64,000 bases of DNA from contig OU015566.1 in assembly GCA_907165135.1 (NCBI GenBank), positions 372,001 through 436,000 of the forward strand. The letters run 5' to 3'. Every line of letters begins with the position of its first letter. The stretch's first letter is position 1. Both the position numbers and the translations under genes were made by a program. This DNA is from Oikopleura dioica (taxonomy: Eukaryota > Animalia > Chordata). The notes beneath the pieces were generated by a model. The model saw only the letters and a list, made by a program, of their open reading frames with translations. It was not told the origin of the DNA and did not search any database. Positions 3,364-58,082 of the stretch are shown piece after piece.

Positions 3364-3504
3364 CTCTTTCACGGTTTTAGCCGTAAAAGGCCTCGCGGGG
3401 ACCAAAATTCTAGAAAAATACGATTCAGTGTGGTCCTTCTTGTACTAATATAGTTTGAATTTTTTTTTATACACATATCTTTATTAATAGTCATAGCATA
3501 AAGT

Positions 3505-3723
3505 TGTAGAGGTTTACTCTCTATATAATAAACTATCAAACTTTCATAGTATTGTAATTTATTTGGTCAGTGGCTAATTTGGAAAAATAGCTGCTCGTGG
3601 ACTAGTGACAGCCGGTTATATAGTGAGCTCAAGTGCTCTTGAAAAGCGCCGCGCCCAGCTCGGGCGACTTCCTTCAAGTGCCAACTTGATTCATCGGGAA
3701 AATAAAGACAGTAAATCCCTATA
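3505..3723 (-). mobile_element. 3' LTR (219 bp) of a Ty3/gypsy-type LTR element
   Basis: Reverse complement of 15898-16116 with one mismatch seen. On the minus strand it is preceded by the polypurine tract GAAGGAGGGAGATAG and followed by ACTT (TSD). Confidence 0.9.
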
Positions 3724-10432: not shown

Positions 10433-13400
10433 CAGGGATGTAAATCACCACAGCCACCCCACCACTGTGGTGGGGTGATTTTTCACCATCCCCTTTTTTC
10501 CGTGGTGGTGGTGGGGTGATTTTTCACCATCACCTTTTTTCAGTGGTGGTGGTGGGGTGATTTTTCACCAACACCTTTTTTAGTGGTGGTGGTGGGGTGA
10601 TTTTTCACTAACACCTTTTTTAAGTGGTGGTGGTGGGGTGATTTTGCACCATTTTTTTTCGAGAAGTGGTGGTGGGATGATTTTTTACAATGGCCATTTA
10701 CATTTTATCTGATAGAAAAATATCATTTATTAAGATAAATAGATATAACTTGCGACATAAAAACTACTGTTTATTATAAAATTTTTTAATTTCTTCTCCA
10801 AGCTCCTTGAAATTGCCAGCGAATTCGTTTTGCAAATTTCTTTCGATCGTAGCCATCTTCTGGCGATTTCGACTCGGATCTCTTGTTTTGCTGGAGACGA
10901 TGCTGAACAATCGCTCGATTTCTGATGACGACGAATTTATTGAGAGAAGCTTAAATTTATATTAACGAAAATAATAAGAATCAATCGACTTACATAACCA
11001 GTAATTTTATACAATCTTGGATAATCCATTTTGTTGGTCTCCCAAAAAGATCGAATAAGTGACGTTACTGATTGACTCTCGCCTGGGGAGTATTTTCCAT
11101 TGATCTTCAAGAATAGCTTCCAGTCCGGTAGATCCATTATTGATTTCATCTAAGATGCTATAAGGCCAATAACCGTTATTTTTACTTGCCATTTATTCCC
11201 TTCGCGGGTGCTGAACGAGAAGCTGAGGCGACTAGCGAAGGATCAACATCAACTTCTTGGTCATCCGAATTTTGAGCAGGCATTTCACACAAGGTCGGCT
11301 CACCGCTTATTTTTCCCCAAAGATCTTTTATGTACTGCTTTGCGTCGTTTTGCCAGTTGGCAATTTCTTTTTTTAGAATTTCGGAATTTTTCCGAAAAAA
11401 TAATCCGATGATTTCTCCATATGCCCGATGAGTTTATATAAATTGCACTTGTGTGTCGGCCAATAGACAAAAACCGCGGCTATAAAATATAATGAAGTAA
11501 CTTTGAAACATGAAAATTTATACCTTTAGTAGCGCCCAAGACGCGAGAACTCTCTTTTCCCTCGACTTCTCCAATCGATTCACTAACATAAGCTTTTCCA
11601 GCCATGAAAAACATGAGTTTTATGAAACAGCTGCGAGCGAAAATTTCCTTGTATTCTCTTATTTCGAAATCTTCTTCAAACTCTCCATCCTCATTTTTCT
11701 TGGGAACTGCAAGTTTTTCAAGTTCGATACCAACTTGTTCAAAGGTCGGCAAATTCTCGGTGATCTTAATTTCATATGCAAAAATGATAATTAATTAATA
11801 ATAATTAATAATAATAATTAATGATAATTGTTCATACTTTTGCATCTGTTCTTTCCATCCTCTTGATATATTTCATAATGCAGCTCAAAATGGAGTGAAG
11901 AGCCGCGCATTTTTCGAACGCAGGAATTCCATGGGACAAATTCTTTAGAACAGGTGAAAATTGGGTCATTTTAAGACTAGAGAGGTCATTTTCAGACTAG
12001 GAAAGGTCACATACGACTATTTTCACCCATTTCCTGTATCAAATATCGCTCATTAGATGTTGCAGAGTCCATCGTAAGAAGTTGATTTGACCAGGAGAGA
12101 ATCAAGCGCAAATGCGTCGTTAAGGATGTAAATCGTATCAGATGCAACGGGCCGGGTAAGGGATATGATGTTTTGATCTTGTGTGCACTTTCCTCTGACA
12201 ATGTAGAGTCAGGCTGCTCCAGTTTGATCATTTTTAATGAATCCGCGGGGGTCGGGACCAAATCGTAAAAATAGTCTCCAAGGGATGGGGGGCTTCCTTT
12301 TGGTTTGTTGAGGGCGTCTATATGTATGGAATTAAGAGAAAATATGTTAAAAACATACCGAGAGTAGCTTTGGAAATGCCTTTTTTTGCTTCTTGGATGA
12401 AAGATTTGATCGAGTCGAAAAATAATGAATCTAGATGAAAAAACTTTTCAGCTTGTTCTATCGCTGCATTTGCAATAAGACTAAAACAAGAGTTCGTTAA
12501 CAATAAATTTTGTTCAAAATTTCATTTCTATGCGTAAAAAGCCCTTTTGCTATGCGAAAAAAGTCCTTTTTCTATGAGACAAAGACCCGCATATTGATTT
12601 GAACTCGACCTTAAAGAGTGACACATGCAGATATTACTTAGCATGCTTATGTTTCTAACCGACCAGTGACACTGCAAATCTGATGTAATCGCAATTTTTG
12701 CGGCGTCCAATGAGAATTTCTAATTGAAAAATATTATAAGACTTTCTTTCATTTTTACCTCGAGAGTTTGCTCGAAAATTGGAATTGATTCTTCGCTACT
12801 AGTTGAATCGACAGCTTCAAAAATTAGAGGATAAACCACCGTTACAGATCCAAGAGTCAGAGTAAGGGCAATGCAGTACGCTTGATCTTGAAAGTCACTT
12901 GTTTTGTTTATCATCGCTTTGTGATCAACTTGTAGCCCACAGTGACCCTTTTCAATAAAAAATGGCACATTTTCCGAAATATAGACCACCATTTCTTCTG
13001 CGGCGATATTGGCTTCTTTGGCGATAAAGTACCGAGATGATTTGAGTTTGATTGCCTCTTGTGGATCAAATCCAAGTGATTCAAGAAGAATTTCATCTCT
13101 TTTTGACACGATGTCACTTAATTTTTCATGAAGATAAAATCTTATCATCACAAGTCTTACCAATCAAAATAGCTCTGGCTGAGATTTTTAGCGCTAACAA
13201 GATAGGAATTGTATTTTTTTATTCTTGTAACAGCGGCCTCGGGAATCTGTTTCGTATTTTTCTTCGTCTTGGCGGCGGTGAAAGGATCCGAAAAGACCAA
13301 TTCATGGTTACGCGTGATATGAATTTTTACTAAAAAGTTTTTGTTCGAAAAATACGCAGTTTACATTTATCGCGGCTTACTAGGGTTCCTCCACCTTCGC

Positions 13401-13915
13401 ATATGAACTCTGAGCTCTTAGATTTACAGTCACCTTCGCAGCGGGCGTATCCACTGTAATCGCCATTTTCTTTGAAGCCGAAAAGGAAACCTTTAATATT
13501 CCAACCTTCGTATTCGTCGAGTACTTTCTGTACTCGGAGAAGAGTCTTTTGATCTTTCGCCTTGGCGAATTGAACTGACAAATTCTCTAATCTTTTGCGT
13601 TTTGCCATATTTAGCTCTAAAGAACTCGCCCGCGGCAAAAACAAAAAAGTGATATCTAGAATAATTTTGACTAAATTGATCTCGAAACTTTTTCACCTTT
13701 TCAATGGTGGTGGTGGGGTGATTTTTTCACCATCACTTTTTTCAGTGGTGGTGGTGGGGTGATTTTTCACCATCACTTTTTTCAGTGGTGGTGGTGGGGT
13801 GATTTTTCACCATCACCCTTTTTCGGTGGTGGTGGTGGGGTGATTTTTTCCACCACGGATCACCCCACCATTTTGCTGTGGTGGGGTGAAAATGGTGTGG
13901 TGATTTACATCCCTG
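10433..13915 (-). mobile_element. hAT DNA transposon family B, full-length copy (3483 bp)
   Basis: TIRs CAGGGATGTAAATCACCAC and subterminal GTGGTGGTGGGGTGATTTTTCACC repeats. TSD ATTAGAAA (13916-13923) has its partner TTTCTAAT displaced to 25177-25184. Confidence 0.92.
10764..13608 (-). pseudogene. hAT-B transposase, multi-exon, frameshifted
   Basis: Fragments LQVDH (D1), ITSD (D2), CMCH (CxxH) and SINSSSSEIERLFS (dimerisation motif). It has an 11-nt shortfall near 11135 relative to the copy at 56.8 kb, which shifts the frame. Confidence 0.75.
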
Positions 13916-15874: not shown

Positions 15875-16117
15875 GCCTGTATCTCCTTAAATTACTTTAT
15901 AGGGATTTACTGTCTTTATTTTCCCGATGAATCAAGTTGGCACTTGAAGGAAGTCGCCCGAGCTGGGCGCGGCGCTTTTCAAGAGCACTTGAGCTCACTA
16001 TATAACCGGCTGTCACTAGTCAACGAGCAGCTATTTTTCCAAATTAGCCACTGACCAAATAAATTACAATACTATGAAAGTTTGATAGTTTATTATATAG
16101 AGAGTAAACCTCTACAA

Positions 16118-16138: not shown

Positions 16139-16850
16139 ACAGCGACTCTAAAAACTGCTGCGCATAAACGACGCAGACAGGTAAGCACAATAGGTGCCCG
16201 ATTAAAAATCGAAAGAAACGACCAGCACAAGCAAGACTGGCACGGAAACCAACTAGTCCGCATTGTCGTGATCACCATACGACCAGCCAAATGCTGAGCA
16301 AGCGCATTAATATGCCGATATCGGTGCGAGAGTTAAGTCTTTGCAACTGACACTCAAACCGTAGAAACAACAACAGCGACTCTATACACTGCTGCGCACA
16401 AACCGACGCAGACAGGTGAGCACAATAGGTGCCCGATTAAAAACAAAATCGAAAGAAATGACCAGCATAAACAAGATTGGCACGGAAACCAACTAGTCCG
16501 CATTGTCGCGATCACCCAACGAACAGCCAAATGCTGAGCAAGCGCATTATTATGCCGATATCGGTGCGAGAGTTAAGTCTTTGAAACTGACACTCAAACC
16601 GTTGAAACAACAATAGCGACTCTATAAACTGCTGCGCACAAACGACGCAGACAGGTGAGCACATAGGTGCCCGATTAAAAACAAAATCGAAAGAAAAGAC
16701 CAGCATAAGCAAGACTGGCACGGAAACCAACTAGTCCGCATTGTCGTGATCACCTAACGACCAGCCAAATGCTGAGCAAGCGCACTATTATGCCGATATT
16801 AGTGCGAGAGTTAAGTCTTTGAAACTGACACTCAAACCATACAAACAACA
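16139..16850 (+). repeat. Three tandem units of about 235-240 bp in the LTR element leader
   Basis: Units start at about 16139, 16373 and 16613 (ACAGCGACTCTA...GCTGCGCA). Confidence 0.85.
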
Positions 16851-17008
16851 ATTAACCACAGCGATGCGTTAAAAAGAAAATCTCCGCCCAAAATGAAGCG
16901 AAATGCGAACATGTGTTAGTCCGTGAAAAGAACTGGAAAATATTGAACGACTGAAATAAGAATATCAAAGTTGAACAAATAACAAATATCAAGGATTTTA
17001 AACTAAAA

Positions 17009-31880: not shown

Positions 31881-32500
31881 AATATAGTAAGGGCTTGCAA
31901 TTTCACTGATTTTTTTTCTGGGATTTTCTCTTAAATCCATGTATTTGCAAGCCCTAAAATGCACTAAATAGTGCAAATTGATTCCGGGTTTTCGCCGAAA
32001 AACGTGCATTTGCAAGGCCACAAATTGCAAGCCCTGACTGTAGTATCGAAGTTTACATCTTTAGGCAGGCACAATTTGTGACTCAAAAGGCAGCTGCCGA
32101 TTTAGGCAGTCACTTGGCCATGGCAGTTGCAATTTTAAAAAGGCTGGCAGTGACTTGACAGTGGCAGCCGCCATTTTTTTCAGATTTCGAACTCTGATTA
32201 CGAGTATTTCGCGAAGTCTCCGAAAAATTGCTCGAAATTTTCACAGTTTGTTCAAGCATTCTTATAAGTAAAAGTGTATTACAGTTTGAAGCACTTTTAA
32301 GGCCGACCCTTTTAAGGCCACTTTTTCGAAAAATTCCGAAAATCTGTCGTCCTAAAAAAATCCACTTTAAGGCCACTTTCCCTTCAATTTCAGTTCAAAA
32401 TCCGAAAGTTACAGTGTCACTTGAAAAAGCTTTTTATTGTGGGAGAAGGTCCCCTCCTCTTAGGCATCGTAACTGGCTCAAATGGCGGACAAAGTCCCCA

Positions 32501-32572
32501 GGAGAAGTAGTGCAGTGGTAGCACACCGGTTCATGAACACGGAGGTCCCTGGTTCGACCCCAGGCTTCTTCA
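32501..32572 (+). ncRNA. tRNA-like Pol III unit in LTR1
   Basis: 72-nt cloverleaf: acceptor GGAGAAG/CTTCTTC, D arm GTGC/GCAC, T arm CCTGG-TTCGACC-CCAGG, A and B boxes and TTTT 5 nt downstream. The anticodon arm is non-canonical. Confidence 0.8.
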
Positions 32573-32875
32573 ATACTTTTCACTCGCCTTTGCCTGATCC
32601 TACAAACTGGTGAAGACAGTGGGTTGTCTAGGTAGCCAAAACAAACCCTAAGCTGAGATTGACGAGGGTCACTCAGTAGCTCAGGAGAAGCTGAAGGTTG
32701 GGAGGGTTGGTAGGCTTGTAACGGTTGCACGGGGACCGTGGCACCAGACAAAGAACCAAAACCTATGGCGGCATATGTAAGACGAGTGATTTGAGCAGTT
32801 ACTAGGGGGAGTTGTGGGAGAAGGTCCCCTCCTCTTAGGCATCGTAACTGGCTCAAATGGCGGACAAAGTCCCCA

Positions 32876-32947
32876 GGAGAAGTAGTGCAGTGGTAGCACA
32901 CCGGTTCATGAACACGGAGGTCCCTGGTTCGACCCCAGGCTTCTTCA
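32876..32947 (+). ncRNA. tRNA-like Pol III unit in LTR2
   Basis: Identical to 32501-32572. Confidence 0.8.
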
Positions 32948-33795
32948 ATACTTTTCACTCGCCTTTGCCTGATCCTACATTATCCTCGACTGCGTGATGC
33001 CTTCTGTTTTTATCTTTATTTTTCTTTTTGGTATTTTTCGATGTTTTTTTCTCGACTTTTTCAATTAACGATGATTTCTTACGGTCTTGTTTGAATTTAC
33101 ACTTCGATTTTGATTCCAATTGTTTCAATCTATAATCATTATATAGCCGTGTAAAAATACGCAGAGGAATGTCTTAACCCTAGCCGGTCAAGGTACTCCA
33201 AATATGGAGCAGGTTTTTACTCATTACCAATATTTAACGTATAATTTCCAGGGTTTAATGATTAAACTTTAATCTATTTCCCCAAGACCATATAATTTGA
33301 GATTTATCATTTGTATAGTCTTATTTGCAGGTAAATCCCTGGCGCCAAATATGGAGGTACCCGAGAAAAACCATTTTTGGCCGGCTAGGGTTAACCATTT
33401 TTCTTTCGAAAAAGCTCAGCAATTGTCTTCTTCACGTCACTATTCTTTGACGTCTTCACTAGAATCTCTTCATATCTTTTTTCTAAGCATTTGCCATGTT
33501 GATTCTTTTTTAAGACATGCTTTAAGAATATAATATTTTTAAAAAAAAGGAAAGAAAGAATCAGAATTGAGTTCAATTTAAAGGACATATTCTGAAAAAG
33601 GCTGCAATTCATACTTTGTTCGGGCGAGAAAAATAACACTTTTTCTATTCTTTAGGAAATAAGTTGAAAGTATATTCCAAGAACAGTGAAAGAAAGTAAA
33701 GTTCCAAATAATTTTATTAACCCTCATTTATCTTTTTCCCAAGAAACGAAAAAATTTGTTGTCATCCGACTCGAGACAAAAAATATCCATTTTAA

Positions 33796-56078: not shown

Positions 56079-58082
56079 CAGGGATGTAAATCACCACAGC
56101 CACCCCACCACTGTGGTGGGGTGATTTTTCACCATCCCCTTTTTTCCGTGGTGGTGGTGGGGTGATTTTTCACCATCACCTTTTTTCAGTGGTGGTGGTG
56201 GGGTGATTTTTCACCAACACCTTTTTTAGTGGTGGTGGTGGGGTGATTTTTCACCAACACCTTTTTTAAGTGGTGGTGGTGGGGTGATTTTTCACCATTT
56301 TTTTTCGAGAAGTGGTGGTGGGATGATTTTTTACAATGGCCATTTACATTTTATCTGATAGAAAAATATCATTTATTAAGATAAATAGATATAACTTGCG
56401 ACATAAAAACTACTGTTTATTATAAAATTTTTTAATTTCTTCTCCAAGCTCCTTGAAATTGCCAGCGAATTCGTTTTGCAAATTTCTTTCGATTGTAGCC
56501 ATCTTCTGGCGATTTCGACTCGGATCTCTTGTTTTGCTGGAGACGATGCTGAACAATCGCTCGATTTCTGATGACGACGAATTTATTGAGAGAAGCTTAA
56601 ATTTACATTAACGAAAATAATAAGACTTCCATCGACTTACATAACCAGTAATTTTATACAATCTTGGATAATCCATTTTGTTGGTCTCCCAAAAAGATCG
56701 AATAAGTGACGTTACTGATTGACTCTCGCCTGGGGAGTATTTTCCATTGATCTTCAAGAATAGCTTCCAGTCCGGTAGATCCAATTTAGTATACTTATTT
56801 ATTTCATCTAAGATGCTATAAGGACAATAACCGTTATTTTTACTTGTCATTTATTCCCTTCGCGGGTGCTGAACGAGAAGCTGAGGCGACTAAAGAAGGA
56901 TCAACATCAACTTCTTGGTCATCCGAATTTTGAGCAGGCATTTCACACAAGGTCGGCTCATCGCTTATTTTTCCCCAAAGATCTTTTATGTACTGCTTTG
57001 CGTCGTTTTGCCAGTTGGCAATTTCTTTTTTTAGAATTTCGGAATTTTTCCGAAAAAAATAATCCGATGATTTCTCCATATGCCCGATGAGTTTATATAA
57101 ATTGCACTTGTGTGTCGGCCAATAGACAAAAACCGCGGCTATAAAATATAATGAAGTAACTTTGAAACATGAAAATTTATACCTTTAGTAGCGCCCAAGA
57201 CGCGAGAACTCTCTTTTCCCTCGACTTCTCCAATCGATTCACTAACATAAGCTTTTCCAGCCATGAAAAACATGAGTTTTATGAAACAGCTGCGAGCGAA
57301 AATTTCCTTGTATTCGTTTATTTCGAAATCTTCTTCAAACTCTCCATCCTCATTTTTCTTGGGAACTGCAAGTTTTTCAAGTTCGATACCAACTTGTTCA
57401 AAGGTCGGCAAATTCTCGGTGATCTTAATTTCATATGCAAAAATGATAATTAATTAATAATAATTAATAATAATAATTAATGATAATTGTTCATACTTTT
57501 GCATCTGTTCTTTCCATCCTCTTGATATATTTCATAATGCAGCTCAAAATGGAGTGAAGAGCCGCGCATTTTTCGAACGCAGGAATTCCATGGGACAAAT
57601 TCTTTAGAACAGGTGAATATTGGGTCATTTTAAGACTAGAGAGGTCATTTTCAGACTAGGAAAGGTCACATACGACTATTTTCACCCATTTCCTGTATCA
57701 AATATCGCTCATTTGATGTTGCAGAGTCCATCGTCTTTTGCCATCGTCTAATCTTTTGCGTTTTGCCATATTTAGCTCTAAAGAACTCGCCCGCGGCAAA
57801 AAAAAAAACAAAAAAGTGATATCTAGAATAACTTTGACTAAATTGATCTCGAAACTTTTTTCACCTTTTCAATGGTGGTGGTGGGGTGATTTTTTCACCA
57901 TCACTTTTCTCAGTGGTGGTGGTGGGGTGATTTTCACCATCACTTTTTTCAGTGGTGGTGGTGGGGTGATTTTTCACCATCACCCTTTTTCGGTGGTGGT
58001 GGTGGGGTGATTTTTTCCACCACGGATCACCCCACCATTTTGCTGTGGTGGAATGAAAATGGTGTGGTGATTTACATCCCTG
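56079..58082 (-). mobile_element. hAT family B internal-deletion derivative (2004 bp)
   Basis: Same TIRs as 10433-13915 and a perfect 8-bp TSD GTAAAGAC. It lacks about 1.5 kb corresponding to about 12077-13586. Confidence 0.95.

What the first reader, a model, noticed from the sequence alone, without database searches (positions are those of the whole stretch)
32438..32979. Mini LTR retrotransposon that may encode its own primer tRNA
Seen: each identical LTR holds a complete 72-nt tRNA-like gene (acceptor, D and T arms intact, A and B boxes, TTTT terminator) whose anticodon arm is broken. Its 3' end plus CCA (...CTTCTTCA-CCA) is complementary to the first 9 nt of the element's PBS (TGGTGAAGA), with a further TGGG match one base out of register. 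Established: TRIMs with small-RNA genes in their LTRs exist (Cassandra with 5S; Helenus with tRNA-like sequence and 4-bp TSDs in animals). Inference: the unit is both Pol III promoter and a translation-dead, self-supplied RT primer, freeing the element from host tRNAs. The 4-bp TSD and CTACA end match the LTR element at 15.9 kb, a candidate helper lineage.
Basis: partly seen in the sequence, partly recalled or inferred. Interest (0 to 1): 0.85.

Follow-up and report, generated by a model that had tools for sequence, protein, structure and literature searches.

The report
tRNA-bearing miniature LTR retrotransposon (Helenus type)
This is a real, recently mobile, protein-less 542-base LTR retrotransposon of the Helenus type, described in 2024, with a tRNA-like gene in each terminal repeat. 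Its primer site pairs with the end of its own tRNA-like RNA over 9 bases, which no host tRNA gene that I could test matches, so a self-supplied primer is possible but unproven.

Summary
Window 32438-32979 is a 542-bp TRIM with two identical 167-bp LTRs and a TTAT target duplication. Each LTR carries a 72-nt tRNA-like unit (Rfam tRNA 50.5 bits) with A and B boxes, intact acceptor, D and T arms, and a degraded anticodon arm. TTTT follows 4 nt downstream. [quoted passage not shown]

The genome fits Oikopleura dioica OKI2018_I69. It holds 13 matches spanning the full element at 10 sites (one a tandem array) and three solo LTRs. Nearly all have 4-bp duplications.

This is the Helenus/TRIMp3 kind (Kojima 2024), here in a tunicate, a lineage not listed there. 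The scan reported this family before at other loci of this genome.

The self-primer idea is neither shown nor refuted.
- For: the tRNA-like 3' end plus CCA pairs with PBS bases 1-9, and no canonical host tRNA gene ends in CTTCA.
- Against: PBS bases 11-18 look like a tRNA-Leu site. Five host Leu-like tRNA types match 12-14 of 18 bases with nearly equal predicted duplex energy.
- No covariation or RNA data could be obtained.

I put self-priming at about 0.35. The 15.9-kb LTR shows no helper features: its PBS differs and it has no RT or IN.

The parts
32434..32437 (+). left copy of the 4-bp target-site duplication (TTAT)
32438..32604 (+). 5' LTR (167 bp, TG...CA)
   Evidence: 100% identical to 32813-32979
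32438..32500 (+). inferred U3, the variable part of the LTR among copies
   Evidence: 20 of 63 alignment columns vary among 11 copies
32501..32572 (+). tRNA-like unit in the 5' LTR. Inferred Pol III promoter (A box 32508-32518, B box 32551-32561) and R region. The acceptor 3' strand plus discriminator, CTTCTTCA, lies at 32565-32572.
   Evidence: ARAGORN; Rfam tRNA 50.5 bits; 0 of 72 columns vary among copies
32577..32580 (+). TTTT, candidate Pol III terminator. It must be read through in the 5' LTR.
   Evidence: apart from its twin at 32952, the only T4 on the sense strand of the element; the window averages 15 T4 per 542 nt
32581..32604 (+). inferred U5, ending CCTACA
   Evidence: 1 of 32 columns downstream of the tRNA-like unit (trailer + T4 + U5) varies among copies
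32608..32625 (+). primer-binding site TGGTGAAGACAGTGGGTT. Bases 1-9 (32608-32616) are complementary to the tRNA-like 3' end plus CCA. Bases 11-18 are tRNA-Leu-like.
   Evidence: invariant in the 11 aligned copies; the PBS complement is exact in 12 places, and one array unit carries a single substitution
32626..32803 (+). non-coding internal region
   Evidence: no real ORF; the 174-aa antisense ORF has no homologue
32804..32811 (+). short polypurine tract AGGGGGAG, one base before the 3' LTR
   Evidence: kept in all copies, with 1-2 G lost in three of them
32813..32979 (+). 3' LTR, with the second tRNA-like unit at 32876-32947 and TTTT at 32952-32955
32980..32983 (+). right copy of the target-site duplication (TTAT)

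Best explanation
The element is a non-autonomous miniature LTR retrotransposon (TRIM) of the Helenus/TRIMp3 kind, in a genome that fits Oikopleura dioica.

Shown:
- Two identical LTRs, a PBS, a polypurine tract and a 4-bp TSD.
- A tRNA-derived unit with A and B boxes in each LTR.
- Many recent insertions elsewhere in the genome.

Inferred:
- RNA polymerase III starts at the tRNA-like unit of the 5' LTR.
- It reads through the weak T4 there and stops at the T4 of the 3' LTR.
- The tRNA-like unit plus trailer is therefore R, the 63 nt upstream are U3, and the 24 nt downstream are U5.
- Reverse transcription and integration are supplied in trans by Ty3/gypsy-type Tor elements of the host, which make 4- or 5-bp TSDs.

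The primer is not settled. Two candidates give near-equal predicted duplex energies with the PBS.
- The element's own RNase Z-cut, CCA-tailed tRNA-like RNA: 9 contiguous pairs at the primer end.
- Host Leu-like tRNAs: 5-6 pairs at the primer end, plus the T-stem stretch further in.
I give self-priming about 0.35. The confidence below is for the element's identity and general mechanism, not for the primer.
For: Structure.

Copies: one search lists 13 matches spanning the full element, at 10 sites because one is a tandem array, plus three solo LTRs. The 11 elements checked (10 single copies plus the array) all start TG and end CA, and 10 have a perfect 4-bp TSD. All three solo LTRs have one too. 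In 8 of the 11 the two LTRs are identical.

Constraint: 2 of 230 alignment columns vary in tRNA-like unit, U5, spacer and PBS. In U3, internal region and PPT, 60 of 315 vary (Fisher p = 3e-13).

Pol III: T4 occurs only directly after each tRNA-like unit, while the window averages 15 T4 per 542 nt.

Coding: the element encodes no recognisable protein.

Known kind: Helenus is defined by exactly these features, with 4-bp TSDs in animals (PMC10886601). Tor elements make 4- or 5-bp TSDs (PMC4402516).

Organism: 64,281,565 bases in 19 contigs fits the 64.3 Mbp in 19 scaffolds of OKI2018_I69 (PMC8008620).

RNA: a 247-nt contig from a marine metatranscriptome spans the T arm, T4, U5, PBS and part of the internal region at 97% identity. 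That would fit read-through of the T4, but DNA carry-over is not excluded.
Against: - Pol III transcription is inferred, not observed. Three oligo-dT RNA-seq runs laid no read on the element or its flanks, so they are no test.
- No autonomous partner was identified. The PBS complement occurs only in copies of this family, and the whole-element search found no other repeat family.
- An intact acceptor and T arm should expose a full-length transcript to RNase P and RNase Z (general knowledge). Only transcripts that escape processing could serve as genomic RNA.
- Sequence relationship to any described Helenus family could not be tested, because Repbase was not available.
Confidence: 0.85

Rival explanations
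1. Self-supplied primer. Short Pol III transcripts that stop at the first T4 are trimmed by RNase P and RNase Z and receive CCA. The resulting 75-nt tRNA-like RNA anneals through its last 9 nt to the PBS of full-length transcripts and primes minus-strand synthesis. The element then needs no host tRNA.
For: - There are 9 contiguous Watson-Crick pairs at the primer end plus 4 more out of register. The predicted duplex energy is -19.6 kcal/mol, the best of the real candidates tested.
- No host tRNA gene matches the PBS. The 15-nt PBS complement occurs only in copies of this family.
- No site in the genome combines a T loop, the CCCAC T-stem strand and an end in CTTCA.
- All 62 sites with a canonical T loop and an end in CTTCA are either TRIM LTRs or sites where ARAGORN finds no tRNA. 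A few AT-rich sites were judged by eye only.
- The wobble-tolerant pattern gave 123 hits against 110 for the control, and about 30 of the hits are TRIM LTRs.
- Acceptor, D and T arms, the parts needed for end processing and CCA addition, are intact, while the decoding arm is not.
- The acceptor 3' strand and the PBS are both invariant in all copies.
- Another LTR in this window has a perfect 14-nt PBS. A poor host match is therefore not the rule here.
- A second repeat family carries the same 9-mer in a similar left context and diverges at base 10. This is a weak lead.
Against: - Only 9 nt match, and about four of them are informative.
- PBS bases 11-18 (AGTGGGTT) are complementary to the T arm of Leu-like tRNAs, not to the element's own T arm. 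The site therefore looks like a modified Leu PBS.
- Host Leu-like tRNAs match 12-14 of 18 bases with duplex energies of -16.9 to -18.8 kcal/mol.
- If the primer's 18 nt were copied into progeny as in retroviruses (established for retroviruses; Ty1 does not do this), some copies should read TGGTGAAGAAGCCTGGGG. None does.
- Kojima looked for such complementarity in all described Helenus families and found none (PMC10886601).
- There is no covariation, because both partners are invariant.
- No RNA evidence could be obtained.
- The one PBS variant seen (C>A at 32617, in a contig of depth 3.3) lengthens the self match to 10 nt. It equally improves the match to two Leu types.
Confidence: 0.35
2. A host Leu-like tRNA is the primer and pairs imperfectly in two parts: the last 5-6 nt (TGGTGA) plus the T-stem segment. 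The 9-nt self match is a coincidence. It is made easier because a Leu-type PBS already shares TGGTGA and A9 with the complement of the tRNA-like end.
For: - 35 genes have the T arm GGGTTCRANNCCCAC. Their 3' ends include TTCAGTCA (12 genes), TCCTGTCA (7), TTCTGACA (4), TCTTGTCA (3) and CTTTGTCA (2).
- These five types match 12-14 of the 18 PBS bases. Their predicted duplex energies are within 3 kcal/mol of the self duplex, and four of them within about 1 kcal/mol.
- The LTR at 15.9 kb in this window uses an exact Leu-type PBS.
- Short functional PBSs are known: 8 nt in Ty3 (general knowledge).
Against: - Only 5-6 contiguous pairs lie at the priming end, followed by 2-5 mismatches.
- Such a poor site is unexpected in a family that inserted at least 13 times recently and keeps the site invariant.
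- The mismatched bases 7 and 8 are exactly those that complete the self match.
Confidence: 0.4
3. A perfectly matching tRNA (3' end ...AACCCACTGTCTTCA-CCA, a Leu-like species with acceptor strand GAAGACA) exists in the animal. It would be missing from this haplotype-merged assembly, or polymorphic.
For: - The full 18-nt site has the layout of a tRNA 3' end complement: discriminator, 7-nt acceptor strand, CCCAC T-stem strand, then two T-loop bases.
- It is invariant in the 11 aligned copies, as expected if the primer sequence is copied into progeny.
- The assembly merges haplotypes (PMC8008620).
Against: - No such gene was found with up to one mismatch, or with relaxed patterns, in a near-complete chromosome-scale assembly.
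- tRNA genes are usually multi-copy.
- The 9-nt self match would then be an unassisted coincidence of about 1/250.
Confidence: 0.08
4. The tRNA-like unit is only a passenger, such as a SINE or tRNA pseudogene caught in an LTR. The element would then be transcribed by Pol II from U3 or by read-through, and the unit would have no role in transposition.
For: - Kojima proposes that Helenus arose by SINE insertion into a TRIM LTR (PMC10886601).
- No transcription data are available.
Against: - The unit is the least variable part of the element, with one variable column across both LTR units, against 41 of 126 columns in U3.
- U3 is only 63 nt, and I saw no TATA box in it.
- T4 is absent from the whole sense strand except directly after each unit.
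Confidence: 0.1

Closest known systems
Helenus (TRIMp3) elements, Kojima 2024, Biology 13:119 (PMC10886601)
   Same: TRIM size, a tRNA-like sequence with A and B boxes in each LTR, PBS and PPT, no coding capacity, and 4-bp TSDs as in animal Helenus. The tRNA-like unit is unlikely to decode.
   Different: The host is a tunicate. The paper lists Arthropoda, Brachiopoda, Chordata (fishes only), Ctenophora, Mollusca and Nemertea, and does not mention Oikopleura or tunicates. The paper states that no Helenus shows complementarity between its tRNA-like sequence and its PBS. Here 9 nt are complementary, and I found no host tRNA with a good match. Sequence homology to any described family was not tested.
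Cassandra TRIMs of plants (5S rRNA in the LTR) and Ajax of nemerteans
   Same: A Pol III small-RNA gene inside each LTR of a TRIM. Tandem LTR-internal-LTR arrays also occur here (L025).
   Different: The small RNA here is tRNA-derived, not 5S. Rfam finds only tRNA. The host is an animal.
Self-priming Tf1/sushi-group LTR retrotransposons (general knowledge)
   Same: The primer would be encoded by the element itself instead of by a host tRNA gene.
   Different: In Tf1 the 5' end of the same transcript folds back on the PBS and is cut by RNase H. Here the genome-encoded match is only 6 nt (TCTTCA). Nine pairs need post-transcriptional CCA, so priming would be in trans by a processed small RNA.
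Tor (Ty3/gypsy Oikopleura retrotransposons), PMC4402516
   Same: They are the dominant LTR elements of this host, make TSDs of 4 or 5 bp, and have inserted recently. They are the likely source of RT and IN.
   Different: Tor elements encode gag, pol and often env. No Tor with the same LTRs or PBS was identified.
tRNA-derived SINEs
   Same: A tRNA-derived Pol III promoter drives a non-coding retroelement.
   Different: SINEs have no LTRs, PBS or PPT and are copied by LINE machinery. This element has the full LTR-element anatomy.

Membership tests
Helenus / TRIMp3 | Two LTRs flanking a short non-coding internal region (TRIM architecture, total up to about 1.3 kb) | tested here: met
   167-bp LTRs and a 208-bp internal part, 542 bp in total. 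No real ORF.
Helenus / TRIMp3 | A tRNA-derived sequence with A and B boxes inside each LTR | tested here: met
   Rfam tRNA 50.5 bits in both LTRs. TAGTGCAGTGG and GGTTCGACCCC read directly.
Helenus / TRIMp3 | PBS just after the 5' LTR and PPT just before the 3' LTR | tested here: met
   TGGTGAAGACAGTGGGTT starts 3 nt after the LTR. AGGGGGAG ends 1 nt before the 3' LTR.
Helenus / TRIMp3 | 4-bp TSD (animal Helenus) | tested here: met
   10 of the 11 full-length elements checked and all three solo LTRs have perfect 4-bp TSDs.
Helenus / TRIMp3 | PBS shared with an autonomous Gypsy partner | tested here: inconclusive
   The 15-nt PBS complement occurs only in this family. A second repeat family shares only the first 9 nt, and its nature could not be read.
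Helenus / TRIMp3 | Sequence relationship to a described Helenus family | not testable with these tools
Helenus / TRIMp3 | Transcription by RNA polymerase III from the LTR | not testable with these tools
   Indirect support only: box A and B, T4 only after the unit. The RNA runs gave no reads.
Functional tRNA gene | Intact anticodon stem-loop with U33 and an isotype consistent with the body | tested here: not met
   3 of 5 stem pairs, an 11-nt loop and C33. A nominal anticodon ATG on a non-His body.
Cassandra / Ajax | 5S rRNA-derived sequence in the LTR | tested here: not met
   The Rfam scan of the whole window finds only the two tRNA hits.
Tf1-type self-priming element | The 5' end of the element's own transcript is complementary to the PBS (about 11 nt, genome-encoded) | tested here: not met
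   The inferred transcript start GGAGAAGTAGTG has no complement near the PBS. The encoded match of the acceptor 3' strand is 6 nt without CCA.
tRNA-derived SINE | No LTRs; LINE-type tail and variable TSDs | tested here: not met
   LTRs, PBS, PPT and fixed 4-bp TSDs.

The most novel reading that the evidence does not exclude
The element makes its own reverse-transcription primer. The Pol III unit in the LTR yields a translation-dead, CCA-tailed tRNA-like RNA whose last 9 nt anneal to the element's PBS. The PBS would be a former tRNA-Leu site whose primer-proximal half has shifted to the self-encoded RNA. If the second repeat family with the same 9-mer proves to be a Tor-type LTR/PBS junction, an autonomous element may use the same element-encoded primer.
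Probability: 0.35. Interest if true: 0.8.

Novelty: new member of a known kind. Interest (0 to 1): 0.5.

Why it matters
As it stands, the finding extends Helenus/TRIMp3 elements to tunicates. It shows a young, active family in one of the most compact animal genomes. It also means that about 30 'tRNA genes' predicted in this genome are LTR parts.

If the self-primer reading is right, it would be the first LTR retroelement known to encode a trans-acting tRNA-like primer. That mechanism was explicitly looked for and not found in all described Helenus families. It would show how a PBS can move from a host tRNA to an element-encoded RNA.

The case is directly testable, because the candidate primer, its PBS and the competing host Leu-like tRNAs are all defined.

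Tried and rejected
1. Host tRNA with the full PBS complement: none. Every exact hit of AACCCACTGTCTTCA is a copy of this family, and the three 1-mismatch hits outside the family are not tRNAs.
2. T loop plus TGTCTTCA: 20 exact hits. The first 10 were checked with ARAGORN and held no tRNA. The rest have no T-stem look.
3. T loop plus the CCCAC strand plus an end in CTTCA: 0 hits.
4. Canonical T loop plus an end in CTTCA: 62 hits, consisting of TRIM LTRs and non-tRNA sites.
5. Wobble-tolerant version of that pattern: no excess over the control. Its last 23 rows were not listed.
6. A complete host tRNA set could not be built.
7. RNA evidence: three oligo-dT runs gave zero reads even on the flanks, so they are no test. 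They may come from another lineage. Only one low-depth metatranscriptome contig matched.
8. Relatives for a covariation test: two metagenome scans gave nothing or 21 prokaryotic tRNAs. A protein search with the spurious 174-aa antisense ORF gave no hit.
9. Route to Tor LTR/PBS junctions through a Gag fragment beside a solo LTR (L031): one marine-metagenome homologue, with no LTR on its contig.
10. The 15.9-kb LTR as helper: rejected. Its PBS differs and the six ORFs scanned there have no Pfam domain.
11. L068, a site whose sequence resembles the T arm and end of the tRNA-like unit, lies in sequence with no tRNA shape and is not tRNA-like.
I did not pursue it further.
Full report
**1. What is there**

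Window 32438-32979 is a 542-bp element bounded by two 167-bp direct repeats that are 100% identical, at 32438-32604 and 32813-32979. The repeats begin TG and end CA. The element is flanked by TTAT on both sides.

- Three bases after the 5' repeat lies TGGTGAAGACAGTGGGTT, a primer-binding site (PBS).
- One base before the 3' repeat lies AGGGGGAG, a short polypurine tract.
- Each repeat holds a 72-nt tRNA-like unit, at 32501-32572 and 32876-32947. ARAGORN finds it, and Rfam's tRNA model scores it at 50.5 bits against a threshold of 29.
- The acceptor stem, D arm, T arm and both Pol III boxes are intact.
- The anticodon arm keeps 3 of 5 pairs around an 11-nt loop and has C at position 33, so the RNA is unlikely to decode.
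- TTTT follows 4 nt after the discriminator base.

**2. It is a mobile family**

The genome has 64,281,565 bases in 19 contigs. This fits the Okinawan Oikopleura dioica assembly OKI2018_I69 (64.3 Mbp, 19 scaffolds; PMC8008620).

- It holds 13 matches that span the full element at 93-100% identity. They lie at 10 sites, because one site is a tandem array of four LTRs and three internal parts under a single TSD. There are also three solo LTRs.
- Ten of the 11 full-length elements checked and all three solo LTRs have perfect 4-bp duplications of different sequence.
- In 8 of the 11 the two LTRs are identical.
- The element has no real ORF. A 174-aa antisense ORF has no homologue.

**3. Where selection acts**

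- Among the 11 aligned copies, only 2 of 230 columns vary in the tRNA-like units, U5, spacer and PBS together.
- In U3, the internal region and the PPT, 60 of 315 columns vary (p = 3e-13).
- The sense strand has T4 only directly after each tRNA-like unit, while the surrounding window averages 15 T4 per 542 nt.

From this I infer the following, without having shown it. Pol III starts at the tRNA-like unit in the 5' LTR. It leaks through the first T4 and ends at the T4 in the 3' LTR. R is then the tRNA-like unit plus its trailer, U3 the 63 nt upstream, and U5 the 24 nt downstream.

**4. What it is called**

These are the defining features of Helenus, a TRIM group with tRNA-like LTRs described by Kojima in 2024 (PMC10886601). 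Animal members make 4-bp TSDs and are thought to be mobilised by Gypsy elements.

The paper lists no tunicate. The host's dominant LTR elements, the Ty3/gypsy-type Tor family, make 4- or 5-bp TSDs (PMC4402516) and are the likely helpers. The element is therefore a new member of a known kind. Earlier notes of this scan reached the same reading for other copies of this family.

**5. The self-primer idea: in favour**

- The tRNA-like 3' end plus CCA (...CTTCTTCA-CCA) pairs with PBS bases 1-9. Four more pairs lie out of register.
The 15-nt complement occurs only in copies of this family.
- No site combines a T loop, the CCCAC strand and an end in CTTCA.
- All 62 sites with a canonical T loop and an end in CTTCA are TRIM LTRs or places where ARAGORN finds no tRNA.
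- A wobble-tolerant version of that pattern gives no excess over its control.

Among canonical tRNA-shaped genes of this genome, the element's own unit is therefore the only one that offers more than 7 contiguous pairs at the priming end. Kojima explicitly reports no such complementarity in any described Helenus. The match is thus unusual for the group.

**6. The self-primer idea: against**

- The PBS is not a plain complement of the self RNA. Bases 11-18 (AGTGGGTT) match the T arm of the host's Leu-like tRNAs.
- 35 genes share the T arm GGGTTCRANNCCCAC. Five of their 3'-end types, covering 28 genes, match 12-14 of the 18 PBS bases. They have 5-6 contiguous pairs at the primer end.
- Their predicted duplex energies are -16.9 to -18.8 kcal/mol. 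The self RNA gives -19.6 and a perfect partner -33.6.
- A Leu-type site already shares TGGTGA and A9 with the self complement. Two specific substitutions are then enough to create the 9-nt match, so chance is not negligible (about 1 in 10 on that assumption).
- If Tor reverse transcription copied 18 nt of the primer into progeny, as retroviruses do, copies with a fully self-complementary or a fully Leu-complementary PBS should exist. None does. Either this inheritance does not operate, as in Ty1, or the primer matches perfectly and is missing from the assembly.

**7. Tests that gave no answer**

- Both pairing partners are invariant in the aligned copies, so there is no covariation.
- Relatives could not be obtained from metagenomes or protein-based look-ups.
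- Three oligo-dT RNA-seq runs laid no read even on the flanks.
- One low-depth marine metatranscriptome contig (247 nt, 97% identical) runs from the T arm across the T4, U5 and PBS into the internal part. It has C>A at PBS base 10 (32617). That lengthens the self match to 10 nt, but it improves the match to two Leu types as well, so it does not discriminate.

**8. A lead I could not finish**

A second dispersed repeat, at 13 or more sites, carries CAAAA-TGGTGAAGA-TACAAAAA....

- It has the same 9-mer as the PBS core.
- It is 13 of 14 identical to the TRIM junction CAAAC-TGGTGAAGA.
- It diverges from the TRIM PBS and from the self complement exactly at base 10.
- In this window the LTR at 15.9 kb reads CTACA-A-TGGTG..., so that the A plus TGG form an ATG. 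Earlier first-reader notes of the scan say that Tor gag start codons are built this way. I confirmed this only for that one LTR.

The second family may therefore be a Tor-type LTR/PBS junction that uses the same primer end. It may equally be chance, because the search pattern fixes only 11 bases.

**9. The proposed helper**

The LTR at about 15912-16117 shares the CTACA end. Its PBS, TGGTGTCAGAAGTG, is an exact 14-nt complement of the host Leu-like tRNA type that ends TTCTGACA. Its internal part holds tandem repeats and minisatellites. It has no ORF of 220 aa or more, and the six ORFs I scanned gave no Pfam hit. Nothing marks it as the helper.

**10. Verdict**

- The element is certainly real and almost certainly a Helenus-type TRIM.
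- Self-priming is a live hypothesis at about 0.35.
- Imperfect priming by a host Leu-like tRNA stands at about 0.4.
- A missing, perfectly matching tRNA stands at about 0.08.

The deciding data are a complete tRNA set, CCA-end tRNA sequencing, primer-cDNA junctions, and related families from other Oikopleura lineages.

Noticed in passing
G000 C1:10812098 and 10812371 (+, 273 nt apart), C1:1312908, 3461544, 8269181, 10052055, 11309229, 11752407, 13732773, C2:6180774, C4:11393793, C5:8369904, 9927129: A second dispersed repeat carries CAAAA-TGGTGAAGA-TACAAAAA(A)TACATATAAAAA. It has the same 9-mer as the TRIM PBS core and diverges at base 10. It may be an LTR/PBS/gag-start junction of a Tor-type family that uses the same primer end, or the match may be chance. 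Its flanks could not be read.
   Followed up: partly
L025:1501-2767 (G000 C1:2724384-2725650): A tandem array of four TRIM LTRs and three internal regions under a single 4-bp TSD (GGTC), like the tandem arrays known for Cassandra.
   Followed up: partly
L033:1501-1572 (G000 C1:10853572-10853643): A stand-alone tRNA-like gene (Rfam 51.1 bits), 80% identical to the TRIM unit. It has a weak anticodon stem, the loop CUUGAAG and a T7 terminator, and no repeats around it. It may be a relative or the source of the LTR unit. The D-stem differences from the TRIM unit are compensatory.
   Followed up: partly
window 15912-16117 (+) and about 3480-3690 (-): Two copies of another LTR in inverted orientation. 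The + copy is followed by a PBS that is an exact 14-nt complement of a host Leu-like tRNA end. An ATG is formed by one A plus the TGG of the PBS. After that come three 240-nt tandem repeats (16205-16881) and 21- and 30-nt minisatellites (20.4-24.3 kb, mirrored at 5.4-9.2 kb). No RT or IN was found.
   Followed up: partly
window 10455-10698, 13698-13861, 56101-56344, 57866-58028: Arrays of 40-41-nt units, each a small hairpin GGTGGTGGTGGGGTGATTTTTCACCATCAC. The units contain TGGTG and CACCA motifs that resemble a PBS and a tRNA end. They lie within two large direct repeats of the window, about 45.6 kb apart.
   Followed up: no
L031:1501-1666 and L032:1501-1666 (G000 C5:16057306 and 16038752): A solo TRIM LTR (TSD GTAC) sits inside a Tor-like gag/protease region and is present twice, apparently through a duplication. 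The flanking 452-aa frame has a weak gag aspartyl-protease hit.
   Followed up: partly
window 32543-32772: A contig from a marine metatranscriptome (depth 3.3) carries a 97%-identical variant of the element. It has C>A at PBS base 10 and a different sequence in the anticodon-arm region upstream of 32543.
   Followed up: partly
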